A stretch of DNA of 64,000 nucleotides, taken from positions 257,462 through 321,461 of the IMG/VR virus record IMGVR_UViG_3300023202_000247; one strand, 5' to 3'. The notes beneath the pieces were generated by a model. That model saw only the letters and a program-made list of their open reading frames with translations, had not been told where the DNA came from and searched no databases. The position numbers and the translations under genes were made by a program. Position 1 is the first letter of the stretch; the number at the start of each line of letters is the position of its first letter. Shown piece by piece: positions 21,530 to 45,226 of the stretch.

Positions 21530-22684
21530 ATGAAAGTCAAAATACAAGGATTTCTTGGTACCAATCATAGTTGGAGTATAGTTCAGCAAAATATAGCTCG
21601 TGGTTTGCTAGCTAATGGCCATGATGTACATTTACAGTCAACTAATGGTTATGATAAATTTCCAAAAGATTTAGAGCCATATAAAAGGCGTGTCTTAGAA
21701 AAAGAATATGATATGCAGTTATCTTATACTGCAATGAAAAACTTTCACGCCTATTTGAGTAATGGTCAAAAAAATCGTTTTGGCATTTGGAATTTTGAGA
21801 GCACGGTATTACCAAAAGGTTTTGCCAAGTATCATAAGTTTGCAGATAAAATGTTGCCATCATCTGAGTTTGCAAAGAGTGTTTTTGTCAGAAATGGTGT
21901 TCCAGATGATAAGTTGGTTGTTATTCCGCATGGTATCAATGTAGAAGAGTATTCTACTGATGATGTTTATCAGTTGCAAACTGATAAGAAAACAAAGATA
22001 CTTACTAACATAGCTCAACCACATGTTCGCAAAAACCTTCCTGGTTTGTTTGAAGCTTATGGTATGGCATTTGATAAAAACGATGATGTATGCTTAGTTG
22101 CAAAAGTATCGGTGAAAAATTTTGATAATAACCATCAAAAGTCATTCAAAAACAGACGCGCTCAAAAAAGAGCGCAGCCAAAAGATAAAAATGATATTCA
22201 ATACTTTGATGTTGACTTTTGGAAAATATATAAGTCTTTCAAAAACAAATTTCCTAATCATGCTGAAGTTGAAATCATAACGGATTTTTTACCAACTATG
22301 GCTCCATTGTATAATGCAACCGACATAGTTTATTCCATGACGCATGCTGAATGCTTTTGGCTTCCTGGTTTAGAGGCTCTTGCAACGGATAATTTAGTAA
22401 TTGCTCCTCGTTATGGTGGGCAGCTTGACTTTTTGAACGATGAAAATTCTCTTTTAGTCGAGGGGAAGATTGTTCGAGCACCTAGAAACATGCAGTATTG
22501 GGTACCAAGCCCTTACGCTGAAATGTTCGAACCATCACTTGATGATGCCGCTGATAAGCTAAAACAAGCAGTATCACAATATGATGTTCTCATGAAAGAC
22601 TTTCGCCCAAAAATGAAGGAACAAACTGATAGGTTGACATGGAAAAATGTTGCTCGTATGATATTGGATTTGTGTGATGAGTAA
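21530..22684 (+). CDS. Glycosyltransferase, GT4 (GT-B fold)
   Basis: PSSEFAKSVF, VIPHGIN, RKNLPGLFEAY, ECFWLPGLEALA...GGQLDFL. Confidence 0.9.
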   Translation: MKVKIQGFLGTNHSWSIVQQNIARGLLANGHDVHLQSTNGYDKFPKDLEPYKRRVLEKEYDMQLSYTAMKNFHAYLSNGQKNRFGIWNFESTVLPKGFAKYHKFADKMLPSSEFAKSVFVRNGVPDDKLVVIPHGINVEEYSTDDVYQLQTDKKTKILTNIAQPHVRKNLPGLFEAYGMAFDKNDDVCLVAKVSVKNFDNNHQKSFKNRRAQKRAQPKDKNDIQYFDVDFWKIYKSFKNKFPNHAEVEIITDFLPTMAPLYNATDIVYSMTHAECFWLPGLEALATDNLVIAPRYGGQLDFLNDENSLLVEGKIVRAPRNMQYWVPSPYAEMFEPSLDDAADKLKQAVSQYDVLMKDFRPKMKEQTDRLTWKNVARMILDLCDE

Positions 22685-22955
22685 AAAGAAATCAAAAGTT
22701 TTACAAAAGCAAGAGTTACTGTATTATGCTTTGGAATCGGAAACGGGATACTCTTCTAATACACGTGAAATTTTCAAATCCATTGACTCTAGCTTTTTGG
22801 AGCGAAAATTGAAGGAAGGAAGTTGCCTTCTCGTTCCTGCCATGGAAGAGGTTTTTGACAAGAAAATACCATATGAGCGTGGCAATTTTGAAGAAGGTCG
22901 ATTAAAATGGGTGGAGTATCTGAATGATATCAATAGTAATACCAGTTCTAAATAA
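22674..22955 (+). CDS. Hypothetical protein
   Basis: 93-aa ORF overlapping both neighbours in the operon. Confidence 0.5.
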   Translation: MMSKKKSKVLQKQELLYYALESETGYSSNTREIFKSIDSSFLERKLKEGSCLLVPAMEEVFDKKIPYERGNFEEGRLKWVEYLNDINSNTSSK

Positions 22956-23625
22956 TTGGAATTTTACCAAAGCTTGCTTGCAAGACCTTCAAAAATTAAC
23001 GGTTCCAAATGAAATCATTGTTGTTGACAATGGTAGTGATGATAAAACTACACAGGAAATTGTGAATTTTGAAGGTATAATACATCATCGTTTTGAAGAA
23101 AACACTGGGTTTGCTCATGCTTGCAACAAAGGATTTACGATTACCAAAGGTAAATATGTGTTGTTTTTAAACAATGATGTTCGTGTTCGTTCTCAACATT
23201 CCAACTGGGTTGAGCCGCTGATGAAAGCAGCTGATGGGCGAAAGCTCGTGGGTCCGACAGTTGGCGTCCTTACCAATGACTTCAATTTTGTCAAAGAAAG
23301 TGATTGTTTCATTGGTGATGACTATCAGTATTATATGAGTGGTTGGAATTTGACTGCTCTACGCTCTGTATTTGAAGACTTAACCTTGGAAGAATATGAT
23401 GGGCCTTTTACCGAGGAGATGGGCAAGGCTTATTTTGAGGATACTGATTTGGGTTTTCGAGCGCGAGAACGAGGCATTGGTTTCGAGATTGTGAACGTAC
23501 CCGTTCACCACTTTGGCAAAATGACCAGTAAAAAGCTAAATACTTTATCATTGTATCAACCTGCAAAAATGAAATTCATACAAAAATGGAAAAACCGAGC
23601 TGGAAATATTACCTTAAAACACTGA
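22924..23625 (+). CDS. Glycosyltransferase, GT2
   Basis: ISIVIPVLN, IIVVDNGSDD, NTGFAHACNKG, VLFLNNDV, YFEDTDLGFR. Confidence 0.9.
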   Translation: MISIVIPVLNNWNFTKACLQDLQKLTVPNEIIVVDNGSDDKTTQEIVNFEGIIHHRFEENTGFAHACNKGFTITKGKYVLFLNNDVRVRSQHSNWVEPLMKAADGRKLVGPTVGVLTNDFNFVKESDCFIGDDYQYYMSGWNLTALRSVFEDLTLEEYDGPFTEEMGKAYFEDTDLGFRARERGIGFEIVNVPVHHFGKMTSKKLNTLSLYQPAKMKFIQKWKNRAGNITLKH

Positions 23626-23792
23626 TAGTAGTAGCCATAGTATTGATTCTACCATACATATCAGTGTTATTTACTTTTGCCATTACAACATTTTTTGGTG
23701 CTAGTGCCATTGTTTGCATCAAACTTTCGTTATTTGTCGGTATTACAGTTGCAATATTGCTTGGATTTTTAATCATAAAAGGACAATTATGA
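23586..23792 (+). CDS. Small two-TM membrane protein
   Basis: 68 aa with two hydrophobic stretches; ATGA-type overlap with next gene. Confidence 0.45.
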   Translation: MEKPSWKYYLKTLIVVAIVLILPYISVLFTFAITTFFGASAIVCIKLSLFVGITVAILLGFLIIKGQL

Positions 23793-24580
23793 AGATTCAT
23801 GTGTTAACACTAACCTGGAATGCTCTTAATAAATTGCGTGCAAATAGCGAACACTTGTTTATCGCCATGAATGATTTTGATTGGACATGGCATTTGAGAG
23901 ATAATGGTTCCAAGGATGAAACCGTGGCTGAATTCTCTGATAAGCAAAACGTATGTTTATACGATATTGGACATAATCGTGATACGTTTGCAATGGGCAT
24001 GAATTATCTATTTAAAAAAGCATCGCCGGCTAAAGATGATGTGCTATTACTATTGAACAATGATGTTTCTGTTGGACGAGAAAGTATCAAGCAAATGCAT
24101 TCTCTCATGACAAAAACAAAAGCAGATGTTGTTGGTTGTCGTTTGTTGTATAATGGTACAAACAAACTTCAACATGCTGGAGTTATCTTTGGACCCAGGT
24201 ATAACAATTTACCATTTCATTTTCGGCCAGGAGAAGTTTCCGACTCGAATGCTGAAAAGGACCGTTATTTTCAAGCCGTTACAGCTGCTTGTTGTTTGGT
24301 AAAGGCATCTGCGTGGGAAGCAGTTGGAGGTATGGATGAAGATTTCAAATGGGCTTTTGATGACGTAACACTTTGTTTGAGTATAAAAAACAATGGAGGT
24401 AAAATTGCCTATTGTGGCAAAACCAAGTCATTCCATGAAGAGAGCGCATCTTTAAAGAAAAATCCCGTAAATAAGATGTTCATTCAGCATAATGTATCAA
24501 AGTTTAAAGAAAAATGGTCTGGTCGTTATGATATAGATCATGATAAATATCTAAAAGATTCTAACTATAATGTAATATGA
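23789..24580 (+). CDS. Glycosyltransferase, GT2
   Basis: Start refined to ATG 23789 after AAAGGA; RDNGSKD, LLLLNND, LQHAGV, AVTAAC, GGMDEDF...FDDV. Confidence 0.9.
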   Translation: MKIHVLTLTWNALNKLRANSEHLFIAMNDFDWTWHLRDNGSKDETVAEFSDKQNVCLYDIGHNRDTFAMGMNYLFKKASPAKDDVLLLLNNDVSVGRESIKQMHSLMTKTKADVVGCRLLYNGTNKLQHAGVIFGPRYNNLPFHFRPGEVSDSNAEKDRYFQAVTAACCLVKASAWEAVGGMDEDFKWAFDDVTLCLSIKNNGGKIAYCGKTKSFHEESASLKKNPVNKMFIQHNVSKFKEKWSGRYDIDHDKYLKDSNYNVI

Positions 24581-25488
24581 TTATCAGTACTAAATACTTT
24601 CCATTTTCTCCAGGAATACCGTGGAAGATGCGTAAAGGAAAGTATTTGATTCCAGAAATTGAACAGGGTGTTTGGGAACGTGCTGTTAAAAATAAAGATG
24701 GAGTTGTGCTTTGCTATGGTGGCTTTCTAGAGAGTTTATTTTCTTTAGCATATGGTGAGATGCTGGTGCGCGTAAAGCCTCAGATGAAACTGTTTTGGGC
24801 CGGCAATCCAGCATTTCATGCAATGATAAAAGAGCATGGGTTATTCAAACCAATAGATTTTCCAAATATTAGTCATAAATATCCCGTGCCTTTATTTATG
24901 AATGATCATTTTGTGTATTTTAACTGCTTGAATAATTATTTGATTAGGTCACCATGGTATGGTGAGCCGAAAAAAATTAATAGAAACTTGATATCCAAAC
25001 AGTTATTTTGCAATTCATTGGTTGAATGGTCGTCACGATATGTTCCAAATATTCGTCATGGCTCTGATAAAACTGGAAAGTATGTACTCATAATACTAAA
25101 TGAGCACAATCACGATTTTGACACATTAAATTGGGATTGGCAATATGTTAGAGAATTTGCATCCATGATGCATGGCTCGATACCAGTTGTTGTAATGGCT
25201 GAAAAAGATATGCCTCACTACTCTAAACATTATGAGTTTCAAAAATTGCAACAGCATCATATAACACTCAACATGTTAAATAATGCTTGGATGGTTTTGT
25301 CAAACGATGTGCATTTTTTAATAGCTGCAATACTATTACAACGCCCACATATACTATCTTTACCGTTTAAAGATAACAGATTTCACTTGTTAAAAAATGC
25401 AGAATTTTTGGACAATGAGAGCGTTATATTAGTAACTGAAGATTTAAAACCATACTACGTATATCAAATTTGTGAAGGAATGAAATGA
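24577..25488 (+). CDS. Putative glycosyltransferase, degenerate GT9-like
   Basis: GGFLESLFS...RVKPQMKLFW and VLSNDVHFLIAAIL loosely match GT9 motifs; context. Confidence 0.4.
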   Translation: MIISTKYFPFSPGIPWKMRKGKYLIPEIEQGVWERAVKNKDGVVLCYGGFLESLFSLAYGEMLVRVKPQMKLFWAGNPAFHAMIKEHGLFKPIDFPNISHKYPVPLFMNDHFVYFNCLNNYLIRSPWYGEPKKINRNLISKQLFCNSLVEWSSRYVPNIRHGSDKTGKYVLIILNEHNHDFDTLNWDWQYVREFASMMHGSIPVVVMAEKDMPHYSKHYEFQKLQQHHITLNMLNNAWMVLSNDVHFLIAAILLQRPHILSLPFKDNRFHLLKNAEFLDNESVILVTEDLKPYYVYQICEGMK

Positions 25489-26243
25489 GTCAAGAAGAAG
25501 CAACAATAATGATGGTAACATATAATCGATTAGAACTTACTAAAAGGATGTTGGATTCATTGTTTCAAAAAACAAAATATCCATTTAACATTGTTATCGT
25601 TGATAATGGTTCTACAGATGGAACCGTTGAATTTTTAACTGATTATTTTGAAAACAGCAAAGCTGATGTTGTTGCAGCTACACTCTTCTTTAATAATAAA
25701 AACAAAGGAATAGCTGTTGGTCGTAATCAAGCTATGAAAATTGCTGATGAAAATTTTCCAAACACAAAGTGGTATTGTACGATAGACAATGATGTAGAGT
25801 TACCATCTGGTTGGCTTACCGAATGTATAGACATCATGTCGAAAAATCCAAAGTATGGAATGATTGGTGTCAATATGGAGACCAAACCATACCCACTCGT
25901 TACTAAAAATGGAAAGACATTTCAAAATAAACCAGCGGGAAACCTGGGAACAGCATGCATGGTATTTCCAAAATCCATACACCAAATGCTCGGGTTTTTC
26001 AATACAGAATATGGTTTGTATGGAGAAGAAGATGCTGATTGGGGTATGAGGGGACGAGTGCTCGGAATTTCCATGGGTTATGTTGAAGAGATGGGAAATC
26101 ATTTTGGCGTAGGAGAAAATGATCAGGGTGAATATCGAGAGTGGAAGACTGAAAAACATAGTGAAAACTTAACGCAGTTTAATCAAAATTGCGCGGCATA
26201 CGCTTCCAAGCACAAGCAACTTTACATTCCATACAAGGAGTAA
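25485..26243 (+). CDS. Glycosyltransferase, GT2
   Basis: IMMVTYNR, VIVDNGSTDGT, NKGIAVGRNQ, TIDND, YGEEDADWG. Confidence 0.9.
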   Translation: MSQEEATIMMVTYNRLELTKRMLDSLFQKTKYPFNIVIVDNGSTDGTVEFLTDYFENSKADVVAATLFFNNKNKGIAVGRNQAMKIADENFPNTKWYCTIDNDVELPSGWLTECIDIMSKNPKYGMIGVNMETKPYPLVTKNGKTFQNKPAGNLGTACMVFPKSIHQMLGFFNTEYGLYGEEDADWGMRGRVLGISMGYVEEMGNHFGVGENDQGEYREWKTEKHSENLTQFNQNCAAYASKHKQLYIPYKE

Positions 26244-26244
26244 C

Positions 26245-28347
26245 GTGGGATCAAATCTCATAAAAGAGATTCCTGGGAAGGAGCTGCGAGACTATGTAAA
26301 ATCTTCTCGTGCATGTAACTTTACCAATGCTGGTGCGGCTTTGGAAGCAAAATTTGGACTATTGGATTTGGAGTTTGATAGCGTTGAAGGAGCAGAGCGC
26401 GTTGCTTTGAAATTACGTCGTCAAGGTGGTAATGGTAAAGTAGCAATAGTTTGTGGCTCAAATGTGGTTGAACAAAATGTTATAAGCAATAAAAGCCAAT
26501 TTCTATCTATAGAGTTGGATAAAAGTTTTGTTAGTATAAAACGCCCAGTTAAAAGCTCTGGAGTTTTAGAAGTCTTATCTGTTTTAGTTTATTCAGATAA
26601 AGACATTGGTATCGTTGAACAAAAAAACTGGAAGTCTATTTTAAGTGGTTGTAAGTACCGTAATATGAAGATAGTAGGCAATAGGTTGCTTGCATCAGAA
26701 GGGGCAAAAATAGAATCGAAAGGTATTGATTTTATCGATACCAACCCTCCCAATTGTGCGCGTATTGATGAATCCGGGGCACAATTTGTATCCAGTTGTG
26801 AAATTTTTGATATCGGAATTTCTAGAATTGGAGGTAAAAAGAAGTCCATTAACATTCCACATTTTGATGCTCCCCTTGATATCGGACCTCCGGTTGAGAC
26901 GATGGATGCGGAACCCAAAGTTATACCAAGCAAGATAAATATCAAAGCACCGGTTAAAAACCCCACTCCTTCATCCAAAGGCGCTAGTGTTTTGTTTGAT
27001 TCCGGTAAAACTGGTTTCTCTATGGAGGCTGTCAAAACAGCTGGTGGTGCAAGTATACTAAACTCTAAATCTATAAAAATTGGTCATCGAGGATGTATAT
27101 CTCTTCCTGTTAGTACTATAGAGGCCAATACACCTTATATAATTATCGCCGAGGCTGTAAGTTCCCGTGGCAATGGTAAGATGATTGCTTATATAGGTGA
27201 AGAAGCTTATAAGGCTGCATTTGGAGTTGCCAATGCAATGAAGAGAAATGTCCACTTCAATGTAAAAAGCGGTGCGCCTCCGGCTCAGGGTTCGTTTCGT
27301 TTGTTTATAGAAAGGCCACAGTCTTCAACTGGAGAAATAATTATAACAAGAATAATGTTGATAAATGCTCCGGCAACTGAGGAGAAGACAACTCAAATCC
27401 TTAGAAGAACTTTGCCACAAAACAACATAAATCTAAATCGTTCTTCGCGGAGTTTGTATACTGATGATATTGCTGACAAAACCATGGCGGCTTTGAAGAG
27501 GTATGCTAGGTTTGCCAATGATGTAAACCCACCAGCAAAATTTGGTGTGTCTGGAACAATTGACATTTCAACAGCTTGTGGAATGAGTTGGTTTAGCAAA
27601 GTGAAAACATTTTTTCCGGACATCAAGCACATTCAAGGCGGCAAACCCGATTTGTTCATAGGAAGACCGGGCGCTTTGCGCCCAGCAAAAAACCTTCTCG
27701 TGGAAGAATTTTTCGGTGAGCTTTCAGATGAAGATATAAAACATGTAAAAAATGCTAATCATGTTTTTACTACATCAGAAAGTAATATTATGTTTTTATC
27801 AAAACATAATAAAAATGTAGAGATTATTAGCAAAGTGTGGCCGGTTATTACTGCTCAAAGGGTTCTTCCAGTAAACTTTAAATATGTTTTAGTTTTCAAC
27901 AGAAGTTTCAAGAACACCGGCATTGTAGTGAAGTCACATATAGATGGAATGCCTAAATTTGTTGTTGCTGGCGCACGAGGTGTACTTCCACCATTTTGTT
28001 TTTTAACCAACGAATATCTCAACTATTCTAATCTGATAGATTTAATTGGGCGCGCTTCTTGTATCGTTGATTTACCACAAATGAATGATTACAACAGCGC
28101 TGTGTTGAATTTGGCACATAATATCGGTGTACCCATAGTTACTACAAATTGGTGGGGTATGCACAAAGATAATGTTCAATATATTTCCTCTGAAGTGCAT
28201 AAAGGAATAGCATGCCCAAATCCAAAAGAGTTGAGGGAAGCCATTGAAAAAGCTTTAACTCAAGAGAAAAAACCTACTGCTTTGATTGCAAATCAAAACA
28301 AATTATTGCATCAAACCATGGCTAAGCTTCTAAAAACTCAACTATAA
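26245..28347 (+). CDS. Large hypothetical protein; beta-rich N-terminal part, C-terminal degenerate GT-B-like region
   Basis: 700-aa ORF; C-terminal LIDLIGRASCIVDL...AHNIGVPIVTT resembles the GT-B second domain. Confidence 0.4.
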   Translation: MGSNLIKEIPGKELRDYVKSSRACNFTNAGAALEAKFGLLDLEFDSVEGAERVALKLRRQGGNGKVAIVCGSNVVEQNVISNKSQFLSIELDKSFVSIKRPVKSSGVLEVLSVLVYSDKDIGIVEQKNWKSILSGCKYRNMKIVGNRLLASEGAKIESKGIDFIDTNPPNCARIDESGAQFVSSCEIFDIGISRIGGKKKSINIPHFDAPLDIGPPVETMDAEPKVIPSKINIKAPVKNPTPSSKGASVLFDSGKTGFSMEAVKTAGGASILNSKSIKIGHRGCISLPVSTIEANTPYIIIAEAVSSRGNGKMIAYIGEEAYKAAFGVANAMKRNVHFNVKSGAPPAQGSFRLFIERPQSSTGEIIITRIMLINAPATEEKTTQILRRTLPQNNINLNRSSRSLYTDDIADKTMAALKRYARFANDVNPPAKFGVSGTIDISTACGMSWFSKVKTFFPDIKHIQGGKPDLFIGRPGALRPAKNLLVEEFFGELSDEDIKHVKNANHVFTTSESNIMFLSKHNKNVEIISKVWPVITAQRVLPVNFKYVLVFNRSFKNTGIVVKSHIDGMPKFVVAGARGVLPPFCFLTNEYLNYSNLIDLIGRASCIVDLPQMNDYNSAVLNLAHNIGVPIVTTNWWGMHKDNVQYISSEVHKGIACPNPKELREAIEKALTQEKKPTALIANQNKLLHQTMAKLLKTQL

Positions 28348-37628: not shown

Positions 37629-37663
37629 GTTCTACAAATATGCATTCTGTGCCATATATTTTG

Positions 37664-39324: not shown

Positions 39325-40244
39325 CAAATTTGAGAAAAATGAAGCTGCATATGCAAAGCCCGGTACAAATGTATTACCCAGAACCGGAGTTTTTTATAGA
39401 AAAGATAAAGAATAAAGAGAGTTTTTATTTCATTCGTTTTCAAATTGAATGGTGGTTGATATTGCGTTTTGGTCTCTGGGCCATGGGGTACAAGGACAAA
39501 CCCGTTCCGAGGCATCTGTTCAAAGACAAACAGTTTCTAAAACGTTGGGGTAAAGAAGTTGTTAGGGCTTGGGATACAAAACGCAAGGGTAAAAAACGAA
39601 AATACAAATTTGATCCCAATGTATTTGCTGACTTGATTGAAATATCAGTTTCACCCAAACCTAAGGATTTTTACTTTGCATATAGTGATCGTGCATTTAG
39701 CAAGCACTTGCCGCCAAAAGCTTGGGATCATAGATGGAAGTGGACATCTGAATTTTTTCAACAATTGTTCCCGCCAGGTGAGATCAATTACTGTTCTTTA
39801 ATATTTAGAAACTGGGCACAATCTGGCAAAATTCATAAAATAATGGAAAGTGTGAAAAATGAAAACGTCTTAATCATCGGACCTTATTATTATAAAAATT
39901 TTGCTAATAAACTCGGCTTCAAGAATGCTAAATACATAGAGATACATCATACACATGCTACTATAAATATAGATAAAAAACTAAAAGAGATTCGGCGTAA
40001 GCGTCAAGAATGGTTTGGCGATGAATATGTATTTGGATTGGTGGTTGGCGGGGCTGCTGGCGCATGGCTAATTCGAAACATGTATGGAATGAAAAATACA
40101 TCTTTCATAGAGTTTGGCAGAGCTTTAGATGTTTACTACTATTATGATAAAGTTTATAAACAAATTCCACAATGGATTTGGGGAACATGGATGGAAAACC
40201 ACAAACCCAAATGGGTTGCAGAGCACAAGGAGTTGATACGATGA
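39321..40244 (+). CDS. Putative GT-D-fold-like glycosyltransferase
   Basis: YFIRF..E, NVLIIGP, LVVGGAAG, FIEFGRALD resemble GT-D-fold (DUF1792-like) proteins. Confidence 0.45.
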   Translation: MTNLRKMKLHMQSPVQMYYPEPEFFIEKIKNKESFYFIRFQIEWWLILRFGLWAMGYKDKPVPRHLFKDKQFLKRWGKEVVRAWDTKRKGKKRKYKFDPNVFADLIEISVSPKPKDFYFAYSDRAFSKHLPPKAWDHRWKWTSEFFQQLFPPGEINYCSLIFRNWAQSGKIHKIMESVKNENVLIIGPYYYKNFANKLGFKNAKYIEIHHTHATINIDKKLKEIRRKRQEWFGDEYVFGLVVGGAAGAWLIRNMYGMKNTSFIEFGRALDVYYYYDKVYKQIPQWIWGTWMENHKPKWVAEHKELIR

Positions 40245-40807
40245 GTTTAGTTATTGCTGCTATGGGTAGATGTGGTTCTACCATGCTTTTTTCTACACTA
40301 AAGAGAAAGTTTTACAAAGCCATATTTGAAAAAGATTTAGCATCATCGTATGCTGATGGTTTAATCATCAAGACTCACGACTTTGCACCTAAACAATTGA
40401 AAAACTGTAAAGTTATTTATCTATTTGGAGATCCTAGAAATATAGTTCTTTCAGCTCATACTAAAGGTAAAATTGATAGGAGAAGACATTATAGAAACAT
40501 GCATGCTCCTTTCAAAGAAGAATTTTTGCAGAATGATACATTTGTAATTAAAGATACTTTGAGGCTGGAAGATAATTTTGATTCATGGTATAAAAAACAA
40601 TCATTTCCTTTGTTGACTCTTAGATACGAAACTCTTTATGATAATCGAGACGTGTTGAAACAATTTTTGGGATTTCCTCCTATGTTGCCAAAACCCAGAA
40701 ACAGAACGACGAACTGGGAAAAGTTTCCCAGAGCTAACAGGTTGGACAAAACATATGCAGGTCTTTTGAAAAAAATAGAAGAGGCTGAAGATGCAAAAAT
40801 TTGGTAA
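40241..40807 (+). CDS. Sulfotransferase-like protein (P-loop)
   Basis: GRCGSTML, IKTHD, YLFGDPRNIVLS, LRYETL; start refined to 40241 after AAGGAG. Confidence 0.7.
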   Translation: MSLVIAAMGRCGSTMLFSTLKRKFYKAIFEKDLASSYADGLIIKTHDFAPKQLKNCKVIYLFGDPRNIVLSAHTKGKIDRRRHYRNMHAPFKEEFLQNDTFVIKDTLRLEDNFDSWYKKQSFPLLTLRYETLYDNRDVLKQFLGFPPMLPKPRNRTTNWEKFPRANRLDKTYAGLLKKIEEAEDAKIW

Positions 40808-40826: not shown

Positions 40827-41825
40827 ATGCAAAATGCTATTATCACTGGTATAACTGGGCAAACCGGTTCATACCTAGCCAAAATTTTATTAGATAAAAA
40901 TTACAAAGTGTATGGTGTTGTTAGAAGAAGTAGTAACTTCAATACTCAACGCATAGACGATGTCTATGACCACCATAATTTAGAGTTGGTATATGGAGAC
41001 CTAGCTGATTATTCTTCGATTACCAGTATAGTAAATGATGTTAAACCGGATTTATTTTTCAACATGGCGGCAATGAGCCATGTGAGAGTATCATTCGACA
41101 TTCCAGAATACACAATGGATGTTACTGGAACTGGTGTGATTAGATGTTTGGAAGCGATACGTCGCAATAGTCCTAATACACGTTTTTTGCAGGCATCATC
41201 ATCCGAAATGTTTGGTAGCTCTCCACCTCCTCAAAATGAAGAAACTCCTTTTCATCCTCGTTCACCGTACGCCGTTGCAAAAGTTGCTGGATATCATGCT
41301 ACTGTAAATTATAGAGAAGCATATGATATGTTTGCAAGCAATGCAATAAGTTACAATCATGAGAGTCCATTTCGAGGGGAGACATTTGTAACTCGTAAAA
41401 TAACAAGAGCCGCTACTAGAATAAAATGTGGGTTACAAGATAAATTGTATCTTGGAAACTTATCGGCAAAAAGAGATTGGTCTCATGCTAAAGATGTTGC
41501 AAATGCCATGTATATGATTTTAACTTCTGATAAGCCAGATGATTATTGTATAGCTTCTGGTTATATGTACAGCGTCGAGGAATTTGTCGAGAAGGTATTT
41601 TCTAGTTTAGAGTTAAATTGGAAAGATTATGTAGAAATTGATCCTCGTTATTTTCGCCCGACTGAGGTTGATGCTTTGTGTGGAGATTCCAGTAAATTGC
41701 GAAAAAATCTAGGATGGGAACTGGAGTATGATTTTGATTCTCTGGTCAAAGAGATGGTTGATGAGGATATGAAATCTGCACAGAAAGAAAAACTCGTATT
41801 AGATTATGAGAAAGGTGACGGTTGA
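40827..41825 (+). CDS. gmd: GDP-mannose 4,6-dehydratase
   Basis: ITGITGQTGSYLA, AAMSHVRVSF, QASSSEMFG, RSPYAVAK, NHESPFRGETFVTRKIT. Confidence 0.97.
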   Translation: MQNAIITGITGQTGSYLAKILLDKNYKVYGVVRRSSNFNTQRIDDVYDHHNLELVYGDLADYSSITSIVNDVKPDLFFNMAAMSHVRVSFDIPEYTMDVTGTGVIRCLEAIRRNSPNTRFLQASSSEMFGSSPPPQNEETPFHPRSPYAVAKVAGYHATVNYREAYDMFASNAISYNHESPFRGETFVTRKITRAATRIKCGLQDKLYLGNLSAKRDWSHAKDVANAMYMILTSDKPDDYCIASGYMYSVEEFVEKVFSSLELNWKDYVEIDPRYFRPTEVDALCGDSSKLRKNLGWELEYDFDSLVKEMVDEDMKSAQKEKLVLDYEKGDG

Positions 41826-42745
41826 GATTACTGATAACTGGAAGTGGCGGATTTCTTGGTAAAAATGTCGTACCAAAATTTGCCAAAGAACAAAGTGTAA
41901 CGCTATTGACACCTCGTAGCCGGGAACTCGATCTTCTCGACCAAAGCTCTACGATGGTGTATTTCGAGCGTGAGCGGCCTGATGTAGTTTTGCACATGGC
42001 GGCTGTTTGCGGTGGTATCAAAGCAAATATGAAAGCGCCCGCGGACTTCATTCATCTCAATTCAGAGATGACTATAAATATATTTAACGCAATTAAAAAA
42101 TTTGATGTAAAATCTCTCTACACTTTAGGTTCAGTTTGCTCTTATCCTTGTCATACACCGGTTCCATTTAAAGAGAAAAACATTTGGAATGGTTATCCTG
42201 AAGCAACAAATGCTCCATATGGAATTGCAAAGAGATTGCAAATGGAGATGCAAAAGCAGTATGCAGATCAATATGGGTTGAAAGGTGCACATCTCATACC
42301 TGTTAACTTGTTTGGGCCTCAGGACCTATTCGATTTAGAAAATAGTCACGTTATTCCAGCTTTGATAAACAAATTCGTTACAGCTGTTAAAAATAACAAA
42401 CAGTCTGTAGAGTTGTGGGGTAGTGGGCAGGCGACTAGAGAGTTTTTGTATGTCGAAGATTGTGCACATGCGCTTCATAAAGCTGTCATGCTAGAATTAG
42501 ATTATCCAGAACCAATAAACCTCGGAACTGGAGAATCAATAAAAATAATTGATCTGGCAAATATAATAGCTGATATAGTAAAATATAGGGGTAATATAGT
42601 TACTACTGGTGATGTTAATGACGGGCAGCCTTTGAGGCAGCTCGACGTTTCACGTGCATATGAAACATTTGGTTTTCGTGCGCGAACCAGTTTGAGAGAA
42701 GGTTTGGAAAAAACCATAAAATGGTATGAGGAAAATTATGAGTGA
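41822..42745 (+). CDS. fcl: GDP-L-fucose synthase (epimerase-reductase)
   Basis: GSGGFLG, HMAAVCGGI.AN...P, YGIAK, NLFGP.D.FD...SHVIPALI, REFLYVED. Confidence 0.93.
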   Translation: MRLLITGSGGFLGKNVVPKFAKEQSVTLLTPRSRELDLLDQSSTMVYFERERPDVVLHMAAVCGGIKANMKAPADFIHLNSEMTINIFNAIKKFDVKSLYTLGSVCSYPCHTPVPFKEKNIWNGYPEATNAPYGIAKRLQMEMQKQYADQYGLKGAHLIPVNLFGPQDLFDLENSHVIPALINKFVTAVKNNKQSVELWGSGQATREFLYVEDCAHALHKAVMLELDYPEPINLGTGESIKIIDLANIIADIVKYRGNIVTTGDVNDGQPLRQLDVSRAYETFGFRARTSLREGLEKTIKWYEENYE

Positions 42746-44237
42746 TGATAAAAATAAGACCTTGGCGGATAAATTGGCAGCTAAGATGCTTGAAAAGGAC
42801 ATTATAACAAAGTCAAAGTTTGAAGAGCAGGTTGTTGCTTTTTCTAGTTGGCCAAAAGAAACGTTGCAAAAAATTGAATCTTTTTTGTTTGACGGTAAGT
42901 CTAGTGATACCGGTGGAGTGGTAATCAATACAGGAACAGATGATAAAGATAAAGCATCTTTAAAAGTTTCTGATTCTGGTGCCACTGTAGAGGCCGACAA
43001 AATTGATTTTTTTACCATCAAATTTGATTCGGATGGAAACATAGTATCTAAATTTCCAGTTATGAGCAGGGAACAAGAATACAAGCTCATAGAGCGTTTC
43101 AAAAATGCATTAAGAGAACAACAAGAGTTACATTATGGTTCATCGGTTGAAGATGGCAGTTCTTTAAAAGATGTAGATATTCCAAAGCGTATAAAAAATT
43201 TGGTAAAAGATTCTTCTAGGAAGGCTGAGTTTAAAAATGATGACGAACTATATGATAAGTTTTCTTTAGCTGAGTTGAAAGATTTAAAAGAGAAACTTTC
43301 TTTAGCTGAGTTGAAAGGTTTAAAAGAGAAACTTTCTTTGAATGATTTGAAAGAGATGAAAGATCCTGAACTTACTGAAACGCCTCTTGGCGATGCTAAA
43401 AAATACTTGGGTGATAAATCTTATACGCTTAAAGATGTTGATGATGGTAGAGTTATCAAACGAACTCTCAATTGGGAGTCTGATGCCAAGTGGTTCAAAA
43501 ATCAATACCCTGGAGCATTCAGACGTTCCGATAATGGTGTTGCAAAAACTAGTAGCGAAGCAGTTGCTGGTATCGCCATTAAACCCGGTGAGCCATCACG
43601 ATATGTAGTTGTTAATGGTGAAAAGAAAAGGGAAATTAAACTAACGCCTGATAAAATGAAAGAGTCAAAATCGAAAACAATTGGTAAAAGCCGTGGTAGT
43701 TTGAGAAATGTTCAATCTGAAAGCGAATATAAAAAACGTGAAAATGAGCTAAAACAATCACTATCACAATGTGACGTTAAAGAGGTACAAGACGCTATTG
43801 ATGACTTAAACCAAGTCGACCCTGTTCAAAAACATATTCAATCAGTATCAAACGGAAATAATCTTACTGATATTCTAGAAAGTGATGAAGACTTTAAAGA
43901 TTTGTTGAAAGATTATTCATTTTTAGATGAGCAGAAAAATACAACTAATCTTTTAGAAAAGCTTGAAGAGAAGATTGTTGAAGCAACTCGTGTTGAACTA
44001 AAGGCGAAACGTGAGTTATTTTTGTTAAATCGTGCATTGGAAGCCTCTTATGTTGCGGCTGAAAAAGAACCAGTTACGCTTGAGTTGCCCAAGCCTGTTG
44101 AAGTAAAACCAACATCTAAACAGTTTTTGGATACTTTCAAAGACATAACTGAAAGCGTTTTGGGTAAAGAATATCATTCTGGAGATGATTGGGAAAAGAT
44201 TTATAATAGAAACAGATTAAGGCATATCAGAAAATAA
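42738..44237 (+). CDS. Hypothetical charged, low-complexity protein with a 12-aa tandem repeat
   Basis: 500-codon ORF after GAGGA; D/E/K-rich; contains SLAELKDLKEKL repeat. Confidence 0.7.
   Translation: MSDDKNKTLADKLAAKMLEKDIITKSKFEEQVVAFSSWPKETLQKIESFLFDGKSSDTGGVVINTGTDDKDKASLKVSDSGATVEADKIDFFTIKFDSDGNIVSKFPVMSREQEYKLIERFKNALREQQELHYGSSVEDGSSLKDVDIPKRIKNLVKDSSRKAEFKNDDELYDKFSLAELKDLKEKLSLAELKGLKEKLSLNDLKEMKDPELTETPLGDAKKYLGDKSYTLKDVDDGRVIKRTLNWESDAKWFKNQYPGAFRRSDNGVAKTSSEAVAGIAIKPGEPSRYVVVNGEKKREIKLTPDKMKESKSKTIGKSRGSLRNVQSESEYKKRENELKQSLSQCDVKEVQDAIDDLNQVDPVQKHIQSVSNGNNLTDILESDEDFKDLLKDYSFLDEQKNTTNLLEKLEEKIVEATRVELKAKRELFLLNRALEASYVAAEKEPVTLELPKPVEVKPTSKQFLDTFKDITESVLGKEYHSGDDWEKIYNRNRLRHIRK
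43261..43362 (+). repeat. 36-bp coding tandem repeat, two near-perfect copies plus one degenerate copy
   Basis: TTTCTTTAGCTGAGTTGAAAG(A/G)TTTAAAAGAGAAAC at 43261 and 43297; degenerate copy from 43333. Confidence 0.9.
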
Positions 44238-44257
44238 TAGACTCAAGTAAATAATTA

Positions 44258-45226
44258 ATGAGTAAGAAAAAGAAAATACTAGTAACTGGTTCGTGTGGTT
44301 TCATATTTAGTAACTTTATGCGATATGCAATCACACAACATGATGTGAATTACAAATTCATAAGCGTTGACAAAGTTAAAAGTTCACGTGTGATGTACAA
44401 TGTATTCTCAAATAAAAATCACACGTTCCACATTGGTGATGTTGCGGATTCGCACTTCATGGATGTAGTATTTCAAGTTGAAGAACCTGATATAGTAATT
44501 CACGCGGCAGCTGAAAGTTTCGTGGATAGTTCTATAAAAAATGCGGACCCGTTTATTCATTCCAATGTTCGTGGAACACAAACTGTTATCGATGCTTGTG
44601 TAAAGTGGGGCGTGGAACGTTTAGTATATATTTCATCAGATGAGATATATGGACAACTAACTAGTGAAGACGATCCTCCATGGCCCGAAACTGCACCAAT
44701 GAATCCACGAAATCCATATAGTGCAACAAAAGCCGCAGGAGAGTTGTTGGTCAAAGCGGCTCATCAAACACATGGATTGAATTATAATATAACTCGTTGT
44801 TGTAATAATTATGGTCCAAGACAAGATCCTGAAAAGTTTCTTCCAAAGATAATTAAATGTGTTATCAACAATGAAAAGATACCAGTTTATGGTCAAGGTA
44901 GACAGGTAAGAGATTGGCTATATGTAAGTGATAATTGTAGGGCTGTTCTTGATATATTAGAAAAAGGAGCTATAAACGAAACTTATAATATTGCAGCTAA
45001 TCAAGAATATTCTAATATAGAAATCTGTCAACTAGTATGCAATGCGCTTGGTAAAGGACATGATTTGATTGAATTTGTCGAGGATAGACCAGGACATGAC
45101 TTTCGTTATAGTGTTGATTGTACAAAATTGAAAGGTATCGGTTGGGAGCCTGAATTCAAGTTCAAACAGGGATTGGAAGAGACTGCCAAGTGGTATATAA
45201 ATAACAAAAGTTGGTTTTTGAAGTGA
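44258..45226 (+). CDS. rmlB: dTDP-glucose 4,6-dehydratase
   Basis: VTGSCGFIFSNF, HAAAESFVDSSI, SSDEIYG, PRNPYSATK, RCCNNYGPRQDPEKFLP. Confidence 0.93.
   Translation: MSKKKKILVTGSCGFIFSNFMRYAITQHDVNYKFISVDKVKSSRVMYNVFSNKNHTFHIGDVADSHFMDVVFQVEEPDIVIHAAAESFVDSSIKNADPFIHSNVRGTQTVIDACVKWGVERLVYISSDEIYGQLTSEDDPPWPETAPMNPRNPYSATKAAGELLVKAAHQTHGLNYNITRCCNNYGPRQDPEKFLPKIIKCVINNEKIPVYGQGRQVRDWLYVSDNCRAVLDILEKGAINETYNIAANQEYSNIEICQLVCNALGKGHDLIEFVEDRPGHDFRYSVDCTKLKGIGWEPEFKFKQGLEETAKWYINNKSWFLK

What the first reader, a model, noticed from the sequence alone, without database searches (positions are those of the whole stretch)
21530..45226. About 24-kb phage-encoded glycan factory between baseplate and replication genes: candidate virion glycosylation/sulfation system
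Seen: about 10 glycosyltransferase-like genes (GT4, four GT2, GT9-like, GT10, GT11, CgeB-like, GT-D-like), nucleotide-sugar enzymes (gmd, fcl, rmlB, DegT), decorating enzymes (NeuD-type acetyltransferase, WbqC, SAM methyltransferase, PhyH dioxygenase, two sulfotransferases) and a glycosidase-like propeller. They are contiguous with myovirus structural genes. I recognised no Wzx/Wzy/ABC exporter or polyprenyl-phosphate initiating transferase, so this does not look like a membrane O-antigen cluster. Known: self-encoded virion glycosylation is established in chloroviruses and mimiviruses, and a locus of this completeness is unusual in a tailed phage. Inference: it builds a fucosylated, acylated, possibly sulfated glycan on virion proteins in the cytoplasm, for shielding from host defences or altering adsorption.
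Basis: partly seen in the sequence, partly recalled or inferred. Interest (0 to 1): 0.88.

Follow-up and report, generated by a model that had tools for sequence, protein, structure and literature searches.

The report
Huge-phage sugar-chain gene island
A 24-kb block of about 20 soluble sugar-building genes really does sit between the tail and replication genes of an uncultured 321-kb phage; it is an expanded version of a small glycosyltransferase cassette that the whole phage clade keeps at that spot, and what the sugars are attached to (virion, host surface or DNA) is still unproven.

Summary
Window 21530-45226 carries 27 ORFs with no predicted membrane segment. Ten are glycosyltransferase-like: GT4, four GT2, GT9-like, a CBM-like+GT-B protein, GT10-like, GT11 and CgeB-like. 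The rest include Gmd, Fcl-like, RmlB-like, DegT, a NeuD/VioB-type acyltransferase, WbqC, a SAM methyltransferase, a PhyH dioxygenase and two weak sulfotransferase-like genes. "GT-D-like" was not confirmed, and four ORFs are near-orphans.

It is not a chimera: window 8021-56622 is 100% identical to stretches fetched from four independently named assemblies.

The new finding is comparative. More than 60 related huge-phage loci keep GT4 + GT2 + GT2 + RmlB-like at the same place, after the 974-aa tail-module protein and before TubZ. The island measures 4.9-9.5 kb wherever both anchors fell within one fetched locus, about 10 and 21 kb in two other contigs, and 24.3 kb here. Extra genes in relatives are methyl-, pyruvyl- and sulfotransferases, and none of 481 island ORFs has four or more membrane segments.

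The target is unresolved. My estimates are a phage-encoded, probably virion, protein (0.40), host envelope glycan (0.27) and DNA (0.12). Large sugar clusters in cyanophages and virion glycosylation in mycobacteriophages are already known, so this is a new variant of a known kind.

The parts
8099..11338 (+). Baseplate wedge gp6-like protein (upstream anchor of the structural module)
   Evidence: PHROG 6 baseplate wedge, E 2e-33. Distant match to phage G gp188. 48-66% identical in relatives.
11338..18018 (+). 2226-aa tail/baseplate-module protein with a ConA-like lectin (Laminin_G_3) domain; candidate glycan acceptor or receptor binder
   Evidence: Pfam PF13385, E 1e-12. Syntenic in all L005-L018. 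One Ser/Thr-rich 30-aa stretch at residue 1568.
18021..20945 (+). 974-aa tail-module protein with a dockerin-like Ca-binding repeat; left anchor of the island across the clade
   Evidence: Pfam PF00404, E 3.5e-10. 40-68% identical homologues in 14 other contigs.
20945..21505 (+). 2H phosphoesterase (Acb1/LigT-like); not a sugar gene
   Evidence: Pfam PF13563 E 1.3e-9, PF23474 Acb1 E 1.4e-5. Present in only 3 relatives.
21530..22684 (+). Core GT4-type GT-B glycosyltransferase
   Evidence: PF13439, E 2e-7. 42 distinct orthologues; 40 of them aligned with the window protein (A4) show a conserved E-x7-E segment. PDB profile hits include chlorovirus GT B736L, 3oy2.
22674..22955 (+). 93-aa ORF of unknown status filling the GT4/GT2 gap
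   Evidence: No Pfam or NCBIfam hit. In relatives GT4 and GT2a abut directly.
22924..23625 (+). Core GT2 (GT2a), GT-A fold
   Evidence: PF00535, E 1e-19. 35 distinct orthologues with conserved VDNGS.D and NND motifs. Generic GT2 PDB hits, including TarS, TarP and SpsA.
23714..24580 (+). Core GT2 (GT2b); the true start is probably the ATG at 23789
   Evidence: PF00535, E 3e-7. 37 distinct orthologues, and the alignment begins at residue ~26 of the window ORF.
24577..25488 (+). GT9-like GT-B glycosyltransferase (sub-clade specific)
   Evidence: No Pfam hit. AF2 pLDDT 86. Foldseek top hit WaaC heptosyltransferase, E 4e-6, TM 0.54; TibC also hit.
25485..26243 (+). GT2
   Evidence: PF00535, E 4e-23. 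49-64% identical in 8 relatives.
26245..28347 (+). 700-aa protein: two CBM-like beta-sandwich domains plus a C-terminal GT-B glycosyltransferase
   Evidence: AF2 pLDDT 71.5 with three folded blocks. Foldseek matches CBM-bearing proteins for the N-terminal part and SenB/GumK GT-B for the C-terminal part.
28338..29273 (-). GT10-like alpha1,3/4-fucosyltransferase
   Evidence: Profile of 4 orthologues hits H. pylori FucT 5zoi/2nzw, E 5e-7, over the conserved motif segment.
29295..30047 (+). GT2
   Evidence: PF00535, E 1e-19.
30044..30757 (+). GT11 alpha1,2-fucosyltransferase
   Evidence: PF01531, E 5.6e-27.
30742..31137 (+). Remnant of a LAGLIDADG homing endonuclease (winged-helix part)
   Evidence: Weak HTH hits. 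Homologous to the cluster-9 ORFs of relatives that carry PF14528.
31170..32117 (+). Glyco_trans_1_2 (CgeB-like) glycosyltransferase
   Evidence: PF13524, E 1.7e-21. 41-51% identical in 4+ relatives.
32104..32865 (-). Sulfotransferase-like protein (weak)
   Evidence: PF13469, E 0.0075, below cut-off. PRGGTT P-loop at residue 24 and REP at residue 123.
32849..33505 (+). Class I SAM-dependent methyltransferase
   Evidence: PF08242, PF13649 and PF08241, E 1e-7 to 5e-10.
33508..34188 (+). NeuD/PglB/VioB-type sugar N-acyltransferase (left-handed beta-helix)
   Evidence: TIGR03570, E 1.4e-41 (142 bits against cut-off 160.8). Hexapep.
34175..35095 (+). Possible GH130-like beta-propeller (weak)
   Evidence: Partial NF052550 match, E 1.4e-9, residues 207-290 only. 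GINT1_N, E 0.003.
34995..35966 (+). PhyH-family 2OG/Fe(II) dioxygenase (gene call in the Logan assembly starts at 35088)
   Evidence: PF05721, E 3e-22. Weak match to the 'sporadic carbohydrate cluster 2OG-Fe(II) oxygenase' model. Gene call.
35944..36615 (-). WbqC-like protein
   Evidence: PF08889, E 1e-60. Bacterial homologues are at most 48% identical and spread over many phyla.
36612..37628 (-). DegT/DnrJ/EryC1-type sugar aminotransferase
   Evidence: PF01041, E 2e-26. Best NCBIfam models are dTDP-4-keto-6-deoxyhexose aminotransferases, well below cut-off.
37640..40244 (+). Three consecutive ORFs without assignable family (37640-38569, 38566-39324, 39321-40244)
   Evidence: No Pfam, NCBIfam or PDB hit. 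39321 has 3 and 38566 has 0 other relatives in 5.8 billion proteins.
40172..40807 (+). Sulfotransferase-like protein (weak)
   Evidence: PF00685, E 2e-4 (21.3 bits against cut-off 22). GRCGST P-loop and GDPRNIVLS element.
40827..41825 (+). GDP-mannose 4,6-dehydratase (Gmd)
   Evidence: TIGR01472, 443.8 bits, above the equivalog cut-off of 415.
41822..42745 (+). GDP-L-fucose synthase-like SDR (Fcl-like)
   Evidence: Best NCBIfam model is NF047922, E 4e-78, below cut-off. Adjacent to gmd here and in L020 and L073.
42726..44237 (+). 503-aa near-orphan
   Evidence: No family hit. One relative at 55% identity.
44258..45226 (+). Core RmlB-like NDP-hexose 4,6-dehydratase, always immediately before TubZ
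   Evidence: TIGR01181, 371.7 bits, above cut-off 365.1. 43 distinct orthologues, mostly 46-66% identical. Distances track TubZ, rho 0.77.
45246..46625 (+). TubZ/PhuZ-like tubulin; right anchor of the island across the clade
   Evidence: PF00091 E 1e-15, PF22453 E 4e-6. 60 related loci.

Best explanation
The island is a phage-intrinsic glycosylation system made only of soluble enzymes that work in the infected cell's cytoplasm.

Core. A small set is inherited with the phage backbone: GT4, two GT2 and an RmlB-like NDP-hexose 4,6-dehydratase. I infer that it lays down a conserved inner glycan containing a 6-deoxyhexose on a phage-encoded acceptor.

Expansion in this phage. Further genes extend and decorate that glycan:
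- Gmd and Fcl-like turn host GDP-mannose into GDP-fucose. A GT11 (alpha1,2) and a GT10-like (alpha1,3/4) fucosyltransferase add it.
- The 4-keto-6-deoxy sugar made by the dehydratase is aminated by DegT and N-acylated by the NeuD/VioB-type enzyme.
- A methyltransferase, a 2OG dioxygenase and two sulfotransferase-like proteins add further groups.
- No nucleotidyltransferase is encoded, so dTDP-glucose, GDP-mannose and PAPS must come from the host.

Acceptor. The most likely acceptor is a surface-exposed virion protein (tail fibre or baseplate proteins encoded just upstream, or a capsid decoration). The variable outer sugars would then be under diversifying selection, as in O-antigens.

Shown: gene content, solubility, clade-wide conservation and position.
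Inferred: sugar identities, order of steps, acceptor and benefit.
For: - All 27 ORFs lack membrane segments. No island ORF of 481 in relatives has four or more such segments.
- Among the 25 families listed of 33 found in the relatives' extra island genes, there is no exporter, polymerase or phosphoglycosyl transferase.
- The core of GT4 + GT2 + GT2 + RmlB-like sits at the same position in more than 60 loci from contigs up to 480 kb.
- Catalytic motifs are conserved in the core enzymes.
- Pairwise distances track the backbone protein TubZ: rho 0.79 for GT2b, 0.77 for RmlB, 0.44 for GT4. A conserved inner enzyme set across phages from many samples fits a phage-encoded acceptor better than host-specific lipid intermediates.
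- The island starts within 0-2.5 kb of the last tail-module gene on the same strand.
- The variable add-ons are typical of exposed glycans: methyl-, pyruvyl- and sulfotransferases, and fucosyltransferases.
- One GT carries two CBM-like modules.
- The GT9-like fold also matches the protein heptosyltransferase TibC.
- Precedent: phage-encoded glycosylation of capsid and tail tube in mycobacteriophages (cited in PMC12619734, and PMC10877033). From my own knowledge: chlorovirus and mimivirus cytoplasmic glycan machineries, the latter with the same logic of 4,6-dehydratase, aminotransferase and N-acetyltransferase.
Against: - No acceptor was identified, and no virion data exist. There is no cultured relative closer than Bacillus phage G, which lacks the cassette.
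- The island borders the replication module as closely as it borders the tail module.
- No class-specific promoter and no strong plus-strand terminator-like site separates it from either module.
- In many relatives unrelated genes are interleaved with the core: an intact-looking Fpg/Nei DNA glycosylase, a membrane-anchored protein and homing endonucleases. The block is therefore not a pure single-purpose operon.
- Soluble GT2 and GT4 enzymes also act on lipid-linked intermediates at the inner face of the membrane.
- The basic pI of the GTs (median 7.7-8.9) fits membrane or DNA binding as well as acidic protein substrates.
Confidence: 0.4

Rival explanations
1. Host-envelope remodelling. The phage enzymes work on the host's own undecaprenyl-linked intermediates (O-antigen, capsule, teichoic acid or S-layer glycan) at the cytoplasmic face. 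They rely on the host's initiating transferase, flippase and ligase. The infected or carrier-state cell then displays an altered surface that blocks superinfection or stops progeny adsorbing to debris.
For: - The gene set looks like an O-antigen or CPS cluster minus its membrane parts.
- This is the published reading of large sugar clusters in jumbo cyanophages such as P-SSM2 (PMC7824862).
- GT2a is as close to the wall-teichoic-acid glycosyltransferases TarS and TarP as to anything else.
- A TubZ-type tubulin next door is compatible with plasmid-like carriage (PMC7824862).
- The basic pI of the GTs suits membrane association.
Against: - No initiating transferase, flippase, polymerase or ligase occurs in any of more than 60 islands.
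- The inner enzyme set is conserved and co-inherited with the backbone across phages from many samples. That is unexpected if the acceptor is a host-specific lipid intermediate.
- No integrase or lysogeny gene was seen in the 64-kb window.
- A ten-GT pathway would need the host flippase to accept a foreign glycan.
Confidence: 0.27
2. DNA hypermodification. The glycosyltransferases build an oligosaccharide on a hydroxylated or hydroxymethylated base of phage DNA, protecting it from restriction and CRISPR nucleases.
For: - The core cassette lies immediately upstream of TubZ, UvsW, DnaC and DnaB.
- 23 relatives' loci (14 distinct sequences) carry an Fpg/Nei-family DNA glycosylase with the N-terminal PE catalytic motif inside the cassette.
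- DNA glycan clusters with several GT4-like enzymes plus sugar-activation genes are documented for RB69, DLP3 and RL38J1 (PMC13326640) and for 5hmC glycans (bioRxiv 10.1101/2023.12.21.572611).
Against: - No thymidylate-synthase homologue, TET/JBP-type dioxygenase, C5-cytosine methyltransferase, dNMP kinase or dCTPase is found anywhere in the 64-kb window. Such genes usually cluster with DNA glycosyltransferases.
- Relatives' flanks were compared only with the window's own proteins, and their extra island genes gave none of these among the 25 families listed.
- Ten GTs, two fucosyltransferases of types that act on glycan acceptors, and sulfate, pyruvate and methyl decoration far exceed the DNA glycans described in the papers read here (up to a trisaccharide).
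- The PhyH and class I methyltransferase genes belong to the variable part, not the core.
Confidence: 0.12
3. Another product. The enzymes glycosylate a non-virion phage protein, or make a free or lipid-bound glycoconjugate or glycosylated small molecule with a role in takeover or competition.
For: - Four ORFs in the island are near-orphans of unknown function.
- The DegT, WbqC, methyltransferase and 2OG-dioxygenase combination also occurs in natural-product sugar tailoring (my own knowledge).
- Jumbo cyanophages carry a second cluster that is read as secondary-metabolite-like (PMC7824862).
Against: - No scaffold-building enzymes (PKS, NRPS, terpene) are in the window.
- Clade-wide conservation of three GTs and a dehydratase at one structural-module border suggests a constant macromolecular acceptor.
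Confidence: 0.15
4. Assembly artefact: a bacterial polysaccharide locus joined to phage sequence.
For: - G+C is slightly lower in the variable part (0.31-0.36) than in the flanks (0.37-0.43).
- Four genes lie on the opposite strand.
Against: - Window 8021-56622, covering both junctions, is 100% identical to stretches fetched from four independently named assemblies.
- The same architecture recurs in more than 60 related phage loci.
Confidence: 0.01

Closest known systems
Virion glycosylation of mycobacteriophages (Freeman et al. 2023, Cell Host Microbe; known to me through citations in PMC12619734 and PMC10877033)
   Same: Tailed phages whose own soluble glycosyltransferases modify structural proteins (capsid and tail tube) inside the host cytoplasm, with no exporter.
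   Different: From my own knowledge, those phages carry about one to four GT genes and no large nucleotide-sugar or decoration set. Here there are ten GTs plus about ten sugar-pathway and decorating genes. No sequence relationship was found, and glycosylation of virions is unproven here.
Chlorovirus (PBCV-1 family) and mimivirus glycan machineries (my own knowledge; the chlorovirus GT B736L is a PDB hit of the core GT4)
   Same: Virus-encoded cytoplasmic GTs plus nucleotide-sugar enzymes. These include GDP-mannose 4,6-dehydratase and fucose synthesis in chloroviruses, and a 4,6-dehydratase, aminotransferase and N-acetyltransferase route to an N-acetylated 4-amino-4,6-dideoxyhexose in mimivirus. 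The glycans have a conserved core and variable outer parts.
   Different: Those are eukaryotic giant viruses. Homology here is only at the family level (E 2.6e-5 to B736L), and the acceptor here is unknown.
'LPS/capsular polysaccharide' sugar clusters of jumbo cyanomyoviruses such as P-SSM2 (PMC7824862)
   Same: Large clusters in tailed jumbo phages that are polymorphic between relatives. They hold several SDR epimerase/dehydratases and GTs of many families. Their target has never been shown experimentally.
   Different: Those clusters include sugar kinases and nucleotidyltransferases and are sporadic accessory genes. Here no nucleotidyltransferase is present, a four-gene core is fixed at one position in the whole clade, and the phages are unrelated to T4-like cyanophages.
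Phage DNA glycan clusters (RB69, DLP3, RL38J1 arabinosyl/hexosyl-5-hydroxycytosine, PMC13326640; 5hmC glycans, bioRxiv 10.1101/2023.12.21.572611)
   Same: Several GT-B or GT-A glycosyltransferases together with sugar-activation genes in a lytic phage, near DNA-metabolism genes.
   Different: Those clusters contain a thymidylate-synthase homologue or 5mC dioxygenase, nucleotide kinases and a dCTPase, and make at most a trisaccharide. None of these genes is in the window, and the decoration set is far larger.
Wzx/Wzy-dependent O-antigen clusters with Lewis-type fucosylation (for example the H. pylori FucT enzymes; PDB 2nzw/5zoi hit)
   Same: Gmd + Fcl + alpha1,2- and alpha1,3/4-fucosyltransferases, amino-deoxyhexose branch, acyl and methyl decoration.
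   Different: No initiating transferase, flippase, polymerase, ligase or chain-length regulator.
Bacillus subtilis spore-crust polysaccharide genes sps/cge (my own knowledge; SpsA is a PDB hit of GT2a; the CgeB-type family is PF13524)
   Same: Soluble GT2 and CgeB-type GTs, a DegT-type aminotransferase, an acetyltransferase and rml-type enzymes decorate a protein shell assembled inside another cell's cytoplasm, without a lipid carrier or flippase. This is the closest cellular analogue of how a virion could be glycosylated.
   Different: That is a cellular developmental system. The similarity here is only at the family level.

Membership tests
Wzx/Wzy- or ABC-dependent surface polysaccharide (O-antigen/CPS) gene cluster | Initiating polyprenyl-phosphate sugar transferase (WecA/WbaP/PglC type) | tested here: not met
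   No Bac_transf or Glycos_transf_4 hit, and no membrane segment in any of the 27 ORFs. None among the 25 listed families of relatives' extra island genes.
Wzx/Wzy- or ABC-dependent surface polysaccharide (O-antigen/CPS) gene cluster | Polytopic flippase/polymerase/ligase or ABC exporter | tested here: not met
   0 of 27 window ORFs and 0 of 481 island ORFs in relatives have four or more hydrophobic segments.
Wzx/Wzy- or ABC-dependent surface polysaccharide (O-antigen/CPS) gene cluster | Nucleotide-sugar synthesis genes plus several GTs in one block | tested here: met
   Gmd, Fcl-like, RmlB-like, DegT and ten GT-like genes.
Virus-encoded virion glycosylation system (mycobacteriophage / chlorovirus / mimivirus type) | Virus-encoded soluble glycosyltransferases, independent of membrane export | tested here: met
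   Ten GT-like ORFs, all without membrane segments, on a phage contig confirmed in four assemblies.
Virus-encoded virion glycosylation system (mycobacteriophage / chlorovirus / mimivirus type) | Glycan covalently attached to structural proteins of the virion | not testable with these tools
   No cultured member. The nearest isolate is phage G, at 23-31% identity for single proteins, and it lacks the cassette.
Virus-encoded virion glycosylation system (mycobacteriophage / chlorovirus / mimivirus type) | Recognisable acceptor segment in structural proteins (for example a Ser/Thr-rich extension) | tested here: inconclusive
   Only one Ser/Thr-rich 30-aa stretch, in the 2226-aa protein, among the structural ORFs of the window. 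Capsid and tail-tube genes lie outside the window.
Phage DNA glycosylation (hypermodification) cluster | Adjacent enzyme that creates the hydroxyl acceptor on a base (ThyA homologue/dCMP hydroxymethylase, 5mC/T dioxygenase with C5-MTase) | tested here: not met
   None in any ORF of the 64-kb window. Relatives' flanks were compared only with the window's own proteins. The rest of the 321-kb genome was not examined.
Phage DNA glycosylation (hypermodification) cluster | Modified nucleosides in packaged DNA | not testable with these tools
   Needs LC-MS, or raw long-read signal from the source samples.
CAZy GT10 (alpha1,3/4-fucosyltransferase), for ORF 28338-29273(-) | C-terminal nucleotide-binding motif segment shared with solved FucT enzymes | tested here: met
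   Profile alignment to 5zoi/2nzw covers ...F.iCtEN....y.TEK.......P.Y.G..., E 5e-7. Pfam PF00852 itself gave no hit.
CAZy GT9 (heptosyltransferase), for ORF 24577-25488 | GT-B fold closest to WaaC/WaaF; ADP-heptose donor | tested here: inconclusive
   Fold match E 4e-6, TM 0.54, 12% identity. No sequence-family hit. The donor is unknown and no heptose pathway genes are present.
Sulfotransferases, for ORFs 32104-32865(-) and 40172-40807 | Family-model score above threshold, and both PAPS-binding motifs | tested here: inconclusive
   Scores are below Pfam cut-offs (17.0 against 27; 21.3 against 22). P-loop-type 5'-PSB motifs and plausible 3'-PB elements are present. A relative's island has a clear Sulfotransfer_2 gene, E 4e-13.
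   No ORF of the island hits this family. The candidate ORFs 38566 and 39321 gave no PDB or family hit.

The most novel reading that the evidence does not exclude
A whole clade of uncultured huge phages (contigs of 200-480 kb, distant sisters of Bacillus phage G) coats its virions with a self-made glycan. The glycan would have a conserved inner core (GT4, GT2, GT2, 6-deoxyhexose) and an outer part that diversifies like an O-antigen. In this phage the outer part would reach Lewis-like di-fucosylated, N-acyl-amino-deoxyhexose-containing, methylated and sulfated structures. That would be a phage 'glycocalyx' evolving under selection from host receptors, defences or grazers.
Probability: 0.3. Interest if true: 0.85.

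Novelty: new variant of a known kind. Interest (0 to 1): 0.6.

Why it matters
If the acceptor is the virion, this would extend self-encoded virion glycosylation from small actinophages and eukaryotic giant viruses to a large environmental clade of huge phages. It would also show the conserved-core, variable-periphery logic known from LPS and chlorovirus glycans. That bears on adsorption, colloidal behaviour, immune or grazer recognition, and on how huge phages spend their extra coding capacity.

If instead the target is the host surface or DNA, the fixed four-gene core gives a defined minimal cassette of about 5 kb (L017) with which the long-standing question of what jumbo-phage sugar clusters do can be tested directly.

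The locus is also a source of unusual soluble enzymes: two fucosyltransferases, a CBM-fused GT-B and sulfotransferase-like proteins.

Tried and rejected
- Megablast of the whole island against 50,697 phage records: no match.
- tblastn of the core GT4, GT2b and TubZ against isolates gave only weak Streptomyces, Listeria or Enterococcus phage GTs and phage G TubZ. No cultured model exists. The context of the Streptomyces phage GT was uninformative.
- Phage G downstream of its gp6-like gene has no sugar genes.
- Host or donor inference from the WbqC gene in 185,579 species genomes: best hits at most 48% identical and spread over Bacillota, Bacteroidota and Proteobacteria, so no host call.
- Promoter approach: TGATATAT (extended -10-like) is strongly strand-biased (102 against 29). 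It precedes TubZ, GT4 and the gp6-like gene alike, so it does not assign the island to a late or early class. TATAAATA is enriched (16 against 6), but its sites are mostly inside genes.
- Consensus promoter and terminator scans were at background, and no strong plus-strand terminator-like site lies at either junction.
- PDB sequence and profile searches of 24577, 26245, GT2b, 38566 and 39321: nothing usable.
- NCBIfam on ten unassigned ORFs: nothing.
- Large-database searches of 38566, 39321 and 42726: near-orphans.
- The membrane-anchored 'cluster 4' protein of relatives was tested as a distant GT9-like homologue (hhalign probability 0.2%) and against the PDB: unrelated. Its family has 599 representatives. 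In one distant contig it lies beside a phage lysozyme and not beside GTs, so it is probably an independent, perhaps lysis-related, gene.
- I could not decide whether this clade is the 'moraphage' lineage, which has four core GT orthogroups (PMC12619734). That paper does not mention tubulin, and its genomes reach only 307 kb.

Full report
**What the window is.** The 64-kb window is part of IMG/VR contig IMGVR_UViG_3300023202_000247 (321,461 bp). G+C is 0.33-0.43, there is no tRNA, and almost all genes are on the + strand. Upstream of the finding lie gp25-like and gp6-like baseplate genes. They are followed by a 2226-aa protein with a ConA-like lectin domain and a 974-aa protein with a dockerin-like repeat. 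Downstream lie a TubZ/PhuZ-like tubulin, a UvsW-type helicase, DnaC- and DnaB-like proteins, a sigma factor and an intein-bearing ribonucleotide reductase. The only cultured relative is Bacillus phage G, at 23-31% identity for single proteins. Window 8021-56622 is 100% identical to stretches fetched from two IMG/VR contigs and two Logan assemblies, covering both junctions of the island. A host/phage chimera is therefore excluded.

**Observation.** The 27 ORFs of 21530-45226 were scanned with Pfam, NCBIfam and PHROGs.
- Pfam-level glycosyltransferase calls are GT4 (21530), GT2 (22924, 23714, 25485, 29295), GT11 (30044) and Glyco_trans_1_2/CgeB-like (31170).
- Three further GTs needed profiles or models. 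ORF 24577 folds with pLDDT 86 into a GT-B closest to WaaC (GT9), E 4e-6.
- The 700-aa ORF 26245 is two CBM-like beta-sandwiches plus a GT-B resembling SenB and GumK.
- ORF 28338(-) matches H. pylori alpha1,3-fucosyltransferase over its conserved motif segment, E 5e-7.
The 'GT-D-like' label found no support.
- Gmd and the RmlB-like dehydratase pass NCBIfam equivalog cut-offs. Fcl-like and the NeuD/VioB-type acyltransferase are best hits below cut-off. DegT, WbqC, a class I methyltransferase and PhyH are clear at Pfam level.
- The two sulfotransferase calls are sub-threshold but carry PAPS-type P-loops.
- The 'propeller' is a partial GH130-like match.
- ORF 30742 is a homing-endonuclease remnant.
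- Four ORFs (37640, 38566, 39321, 42726) have no family hit, and the three searched are near-orphans.
- No ORF has a membrane segment.

**Comparative result (the main addition).**
- The 974-aa tail-module protein retrieves 14 further contigs at 40-68% identity, and a TubZ profile retrieves 60 loci at 47-63%. The contigs reach 480 kb.
- In nearly all of them the order is gp6-like, 2226-aa homologue, 974-aa homologue, island, TubZ, UvsW, DnaC, DnaB, sigma.
- The island always contains homologues of four window genes: GT4 (42 distinct sequences), GT2a (35), GT2b (37) and the RmlB-like dehydratase (43). The dehydratase always lies immediately before TubZ.
- The smallest version (L017) is GT4, GT2a, a 328-aa membrane-anchored protein, GT2b and RmlB-like, 4.9 kb from tail-gene end to TubZ.
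- Island length is 4.9-9.5 kb in the 37 loci where both anchors fell within one fetched locus. That set cannot include islands longer than the 10-kb flank.
- From contig coordinates the island is about 10.3 kb and about 21.0 kb in two other contigs. It is 24.3 kb here. At least eleven relatives of the window's sub-clade exceed 10 kb.
- That sub-clade shares the GT9-like gene, the third GT2, the 700-aa GT, the GT10-like, GT11 and CgeB-like genes, and gmd/fcl in varying combinations.
- Catalytic motifs of the core enzymes are conserved.
- Pairwise distances correlate with those of TubZ: rho 0.79 for GT2b, 0.77 for RmlB-like and 0.44 for GT4. The core is old and mostly vertically inherited.
- Extra genes in relatives' islands are methyltransferases (6 of 48 sampled), GT2 (4), SDR enzymes (3), polysaccharide pyruvyl transferases (2) and a clear sulfotransferase. 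Unrelated passengers are also present: glutamine synthetase, a TnpB-like gene and homing endonucleases.
- None of 481 island ORFs has four or more hydrophobic segments.

**Complications.**
- In 23 relatives' loci (14 distinct sequences) an Fpg/Nei DNA glycosylase with the catalytic N-terminal Pro-Glu lies between GT2a and GT2b.
- In 41 loci a protein with one strong N-terminal membrane helix, a coiled coil, a Pro/Asn/Ser/Thr-rich linker and a beta-rich domain lies before GT2b.
- This family has 599 representatives. It is unrelated to the GT9-like protein. In one distant contig it sits beside a phage lysozyme instead of GTs.
- I therefore treat both genes as neighbours rather than pathway members, with low certainty. 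They show that this inter-module region is a general insertion site.

**Inferred chemistry** (from established family functions).
- Gmd converts GDP-mannose to GDP-4-keto-6-deoxymannose and the Fcl-like SDR converts that to GDP-L-fucose. GT11 and the GT10-like enzyme would add alpha1,2- and alpha1,3/4-fucose, a Lewis-type pairing.
- The RmlB-like enzyme makes an NDP-4-keto-6-deoxyhexose. DegT would aminate it and the NeuD/VioB-type enzyme would N-acylate it, giving a viosamine- or Fuc4NAc-like sugar. The role of WbqC is unknown.
- The methyltransferase, the 2OG dioxygenase and the sulfotransferase-like proteins would decorate the product.
- No nucleotidyltransferase is encoded, so the host must supply dTDP- or UDP-glucose, GDP-mannose and PAPS.

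**What is the acceptor?** Three readings remain.
- Phage-encoded, probably virion, protein (0.40). This is favoured by solubility, the absence of any export or initiation gene in more than 60 islands, a conserved inner enzyme set with a variable periphery, the position after the tail genes, decorations typical of exposed glycans, and precedents in mycobacteriophages and giant viruses.
- Host envelope glycan (0.27). This is the published reading for jumbo-cyanophage sugar clusters (PMC7824862). It fits peripheral GTs acting on lipid-linked intermediates and possible TubZ-based carriage. It requires host initiation and export, and it is hard to reconcile with a backbone-linked conserved core.
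- DNA glycan (0.12). It has real precedents with several GT4-like enzymes and sugar-activation genes (PMC13326640; bioRxiv 10.1101/2023.12.21.572611). It is hinted at by the adjacent replication genes and by the Fpg/Nei gene. But no base-hydroxylating enzyme, nucleotide kinase or dCTPase is present in the window, and the size and chemistry of the gene set exceed the DNA glycans described in those papers.
- Promoter and terminator analysis did not assign the island to either neighbouring module.

**Novelty and verdict.** Three things are new. First, a fixed four-gene glycosylation core defines a large uncultured huge-phage clade. Second, it expands in an O-antigen-like manner to 24 kb. Third, the gene set combines two fucosyltransferases with amino-sugar, methyl and probable sulfate decoration. 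I rate it a new variant of a known kind, with interest 0.6.

Noticed in passing
window 20945-21505: A 2H phosphoesterase with a sub-threshold match to the anti-CBASS protein Acb1 (PF23474, E 1.4e-5) sits between the last tail-module gene and the island. Only three relatives have it at this position.
   Followed up: partly
window 45246-46625 and L020-L077: A TubZ/PhuZ-like tubulin is conserved (47-63% identity) in all 60 related loci, directly after the RmlB-like gene. Its nearest cultured homologue is phage G gp138 (23.5%). Whether it serves plasmid-like segregation or a PhuZ-type spindle is open.
   Followed up: partly
L076:6268-7107 and homologues in 23 loci (14 distinct sequences): An Fpg/Nei-family DNA glycosylase with the catalytic N-terminal PE motif and a C-terminal WCP..Q element lies inside the glycosyltransferase cassette, between GT2a and GT2b. 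It is absent from the window. Nei enzymes excise oxidised pyrimidines, so its placement next to GTs is unexplained.
   Followed up: partly
L017:15047-16033 and homologues in 41 loci: A ~330-aa protein with one strong N-terminal membrane helix, a coiled coil, a Pro/Asn/Ser/Thr-rich linker and a beta-rich C-terminal domain is embedded in the core cassette of most relatives but missing from the window's sub-clade. The family has 599 representatives and no annotation. In one distant contig it neighbours a phage lysozyme.
   Followed up: partly
window 52579-56286: The ribonucleotide reductase large subunit is 1235 aa, with an endonuclease-like insert (residues ~303-499). This is probably an intein with a homing endonuclease.
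   Followed up: no
window 2908-3822; L006, L025, L027, L030, L031, L066: An HNH/endonuclease VII-like gene lies inside the structural module and has paralogues scattered through relatives' islands. LAGLIDADG, GIY-YIG/NUMOD3 and treble-clef (DUF4379) endonuclease genes also occur there. The clade is heavily colonised by homing endonucleases.
   Followed up: partly
window 2891, 8065, 29279, 40811, 44950; all related loci: The motif TGATATAT (extended -10-like) occurs 102 times on the coding strand against 29 on the other in 1.3 Mb of clade sequence. It often lies 10-60 nt before start codons (TubZ in 16 loci, GT4 in 8). It is likely a clade-wide promoter element.
   Followed up: partly
window 3824-5905: A 693-aa, very acidic (pI 4.05) structural-module protein has four hydrophobic segments (residues 89-215). 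It may be an ejection or tape-measure-associated protein.
   Followed up: no
window 59419-59538: The only intergenic stem-loop with a T run that I saw by eye in the gaps printed (GC-rich stem followed by T8) lies here, well downstream of the island. This stretch was outside the terminator scans.
   Followed up: no
L007:16090-17157; L061:292-1071; L029:137-2533: Relatives carry unexpected passengers next to the island: a glutamine synthetase-like gene, an FGE-sulfatase-like (formylglycine-generating enzyme fold) gene, and a 798-aa protein with eight Big_3_5 Ig-like repeats just before GT4.
   Followed up: no
window 57595-58401: A methionine-aminopeptidase-type M24 peptidase (PF00557, E 4e-33) is encoded in the replication-side module and is conserved in L020 (50% identity).
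   Followed up: no
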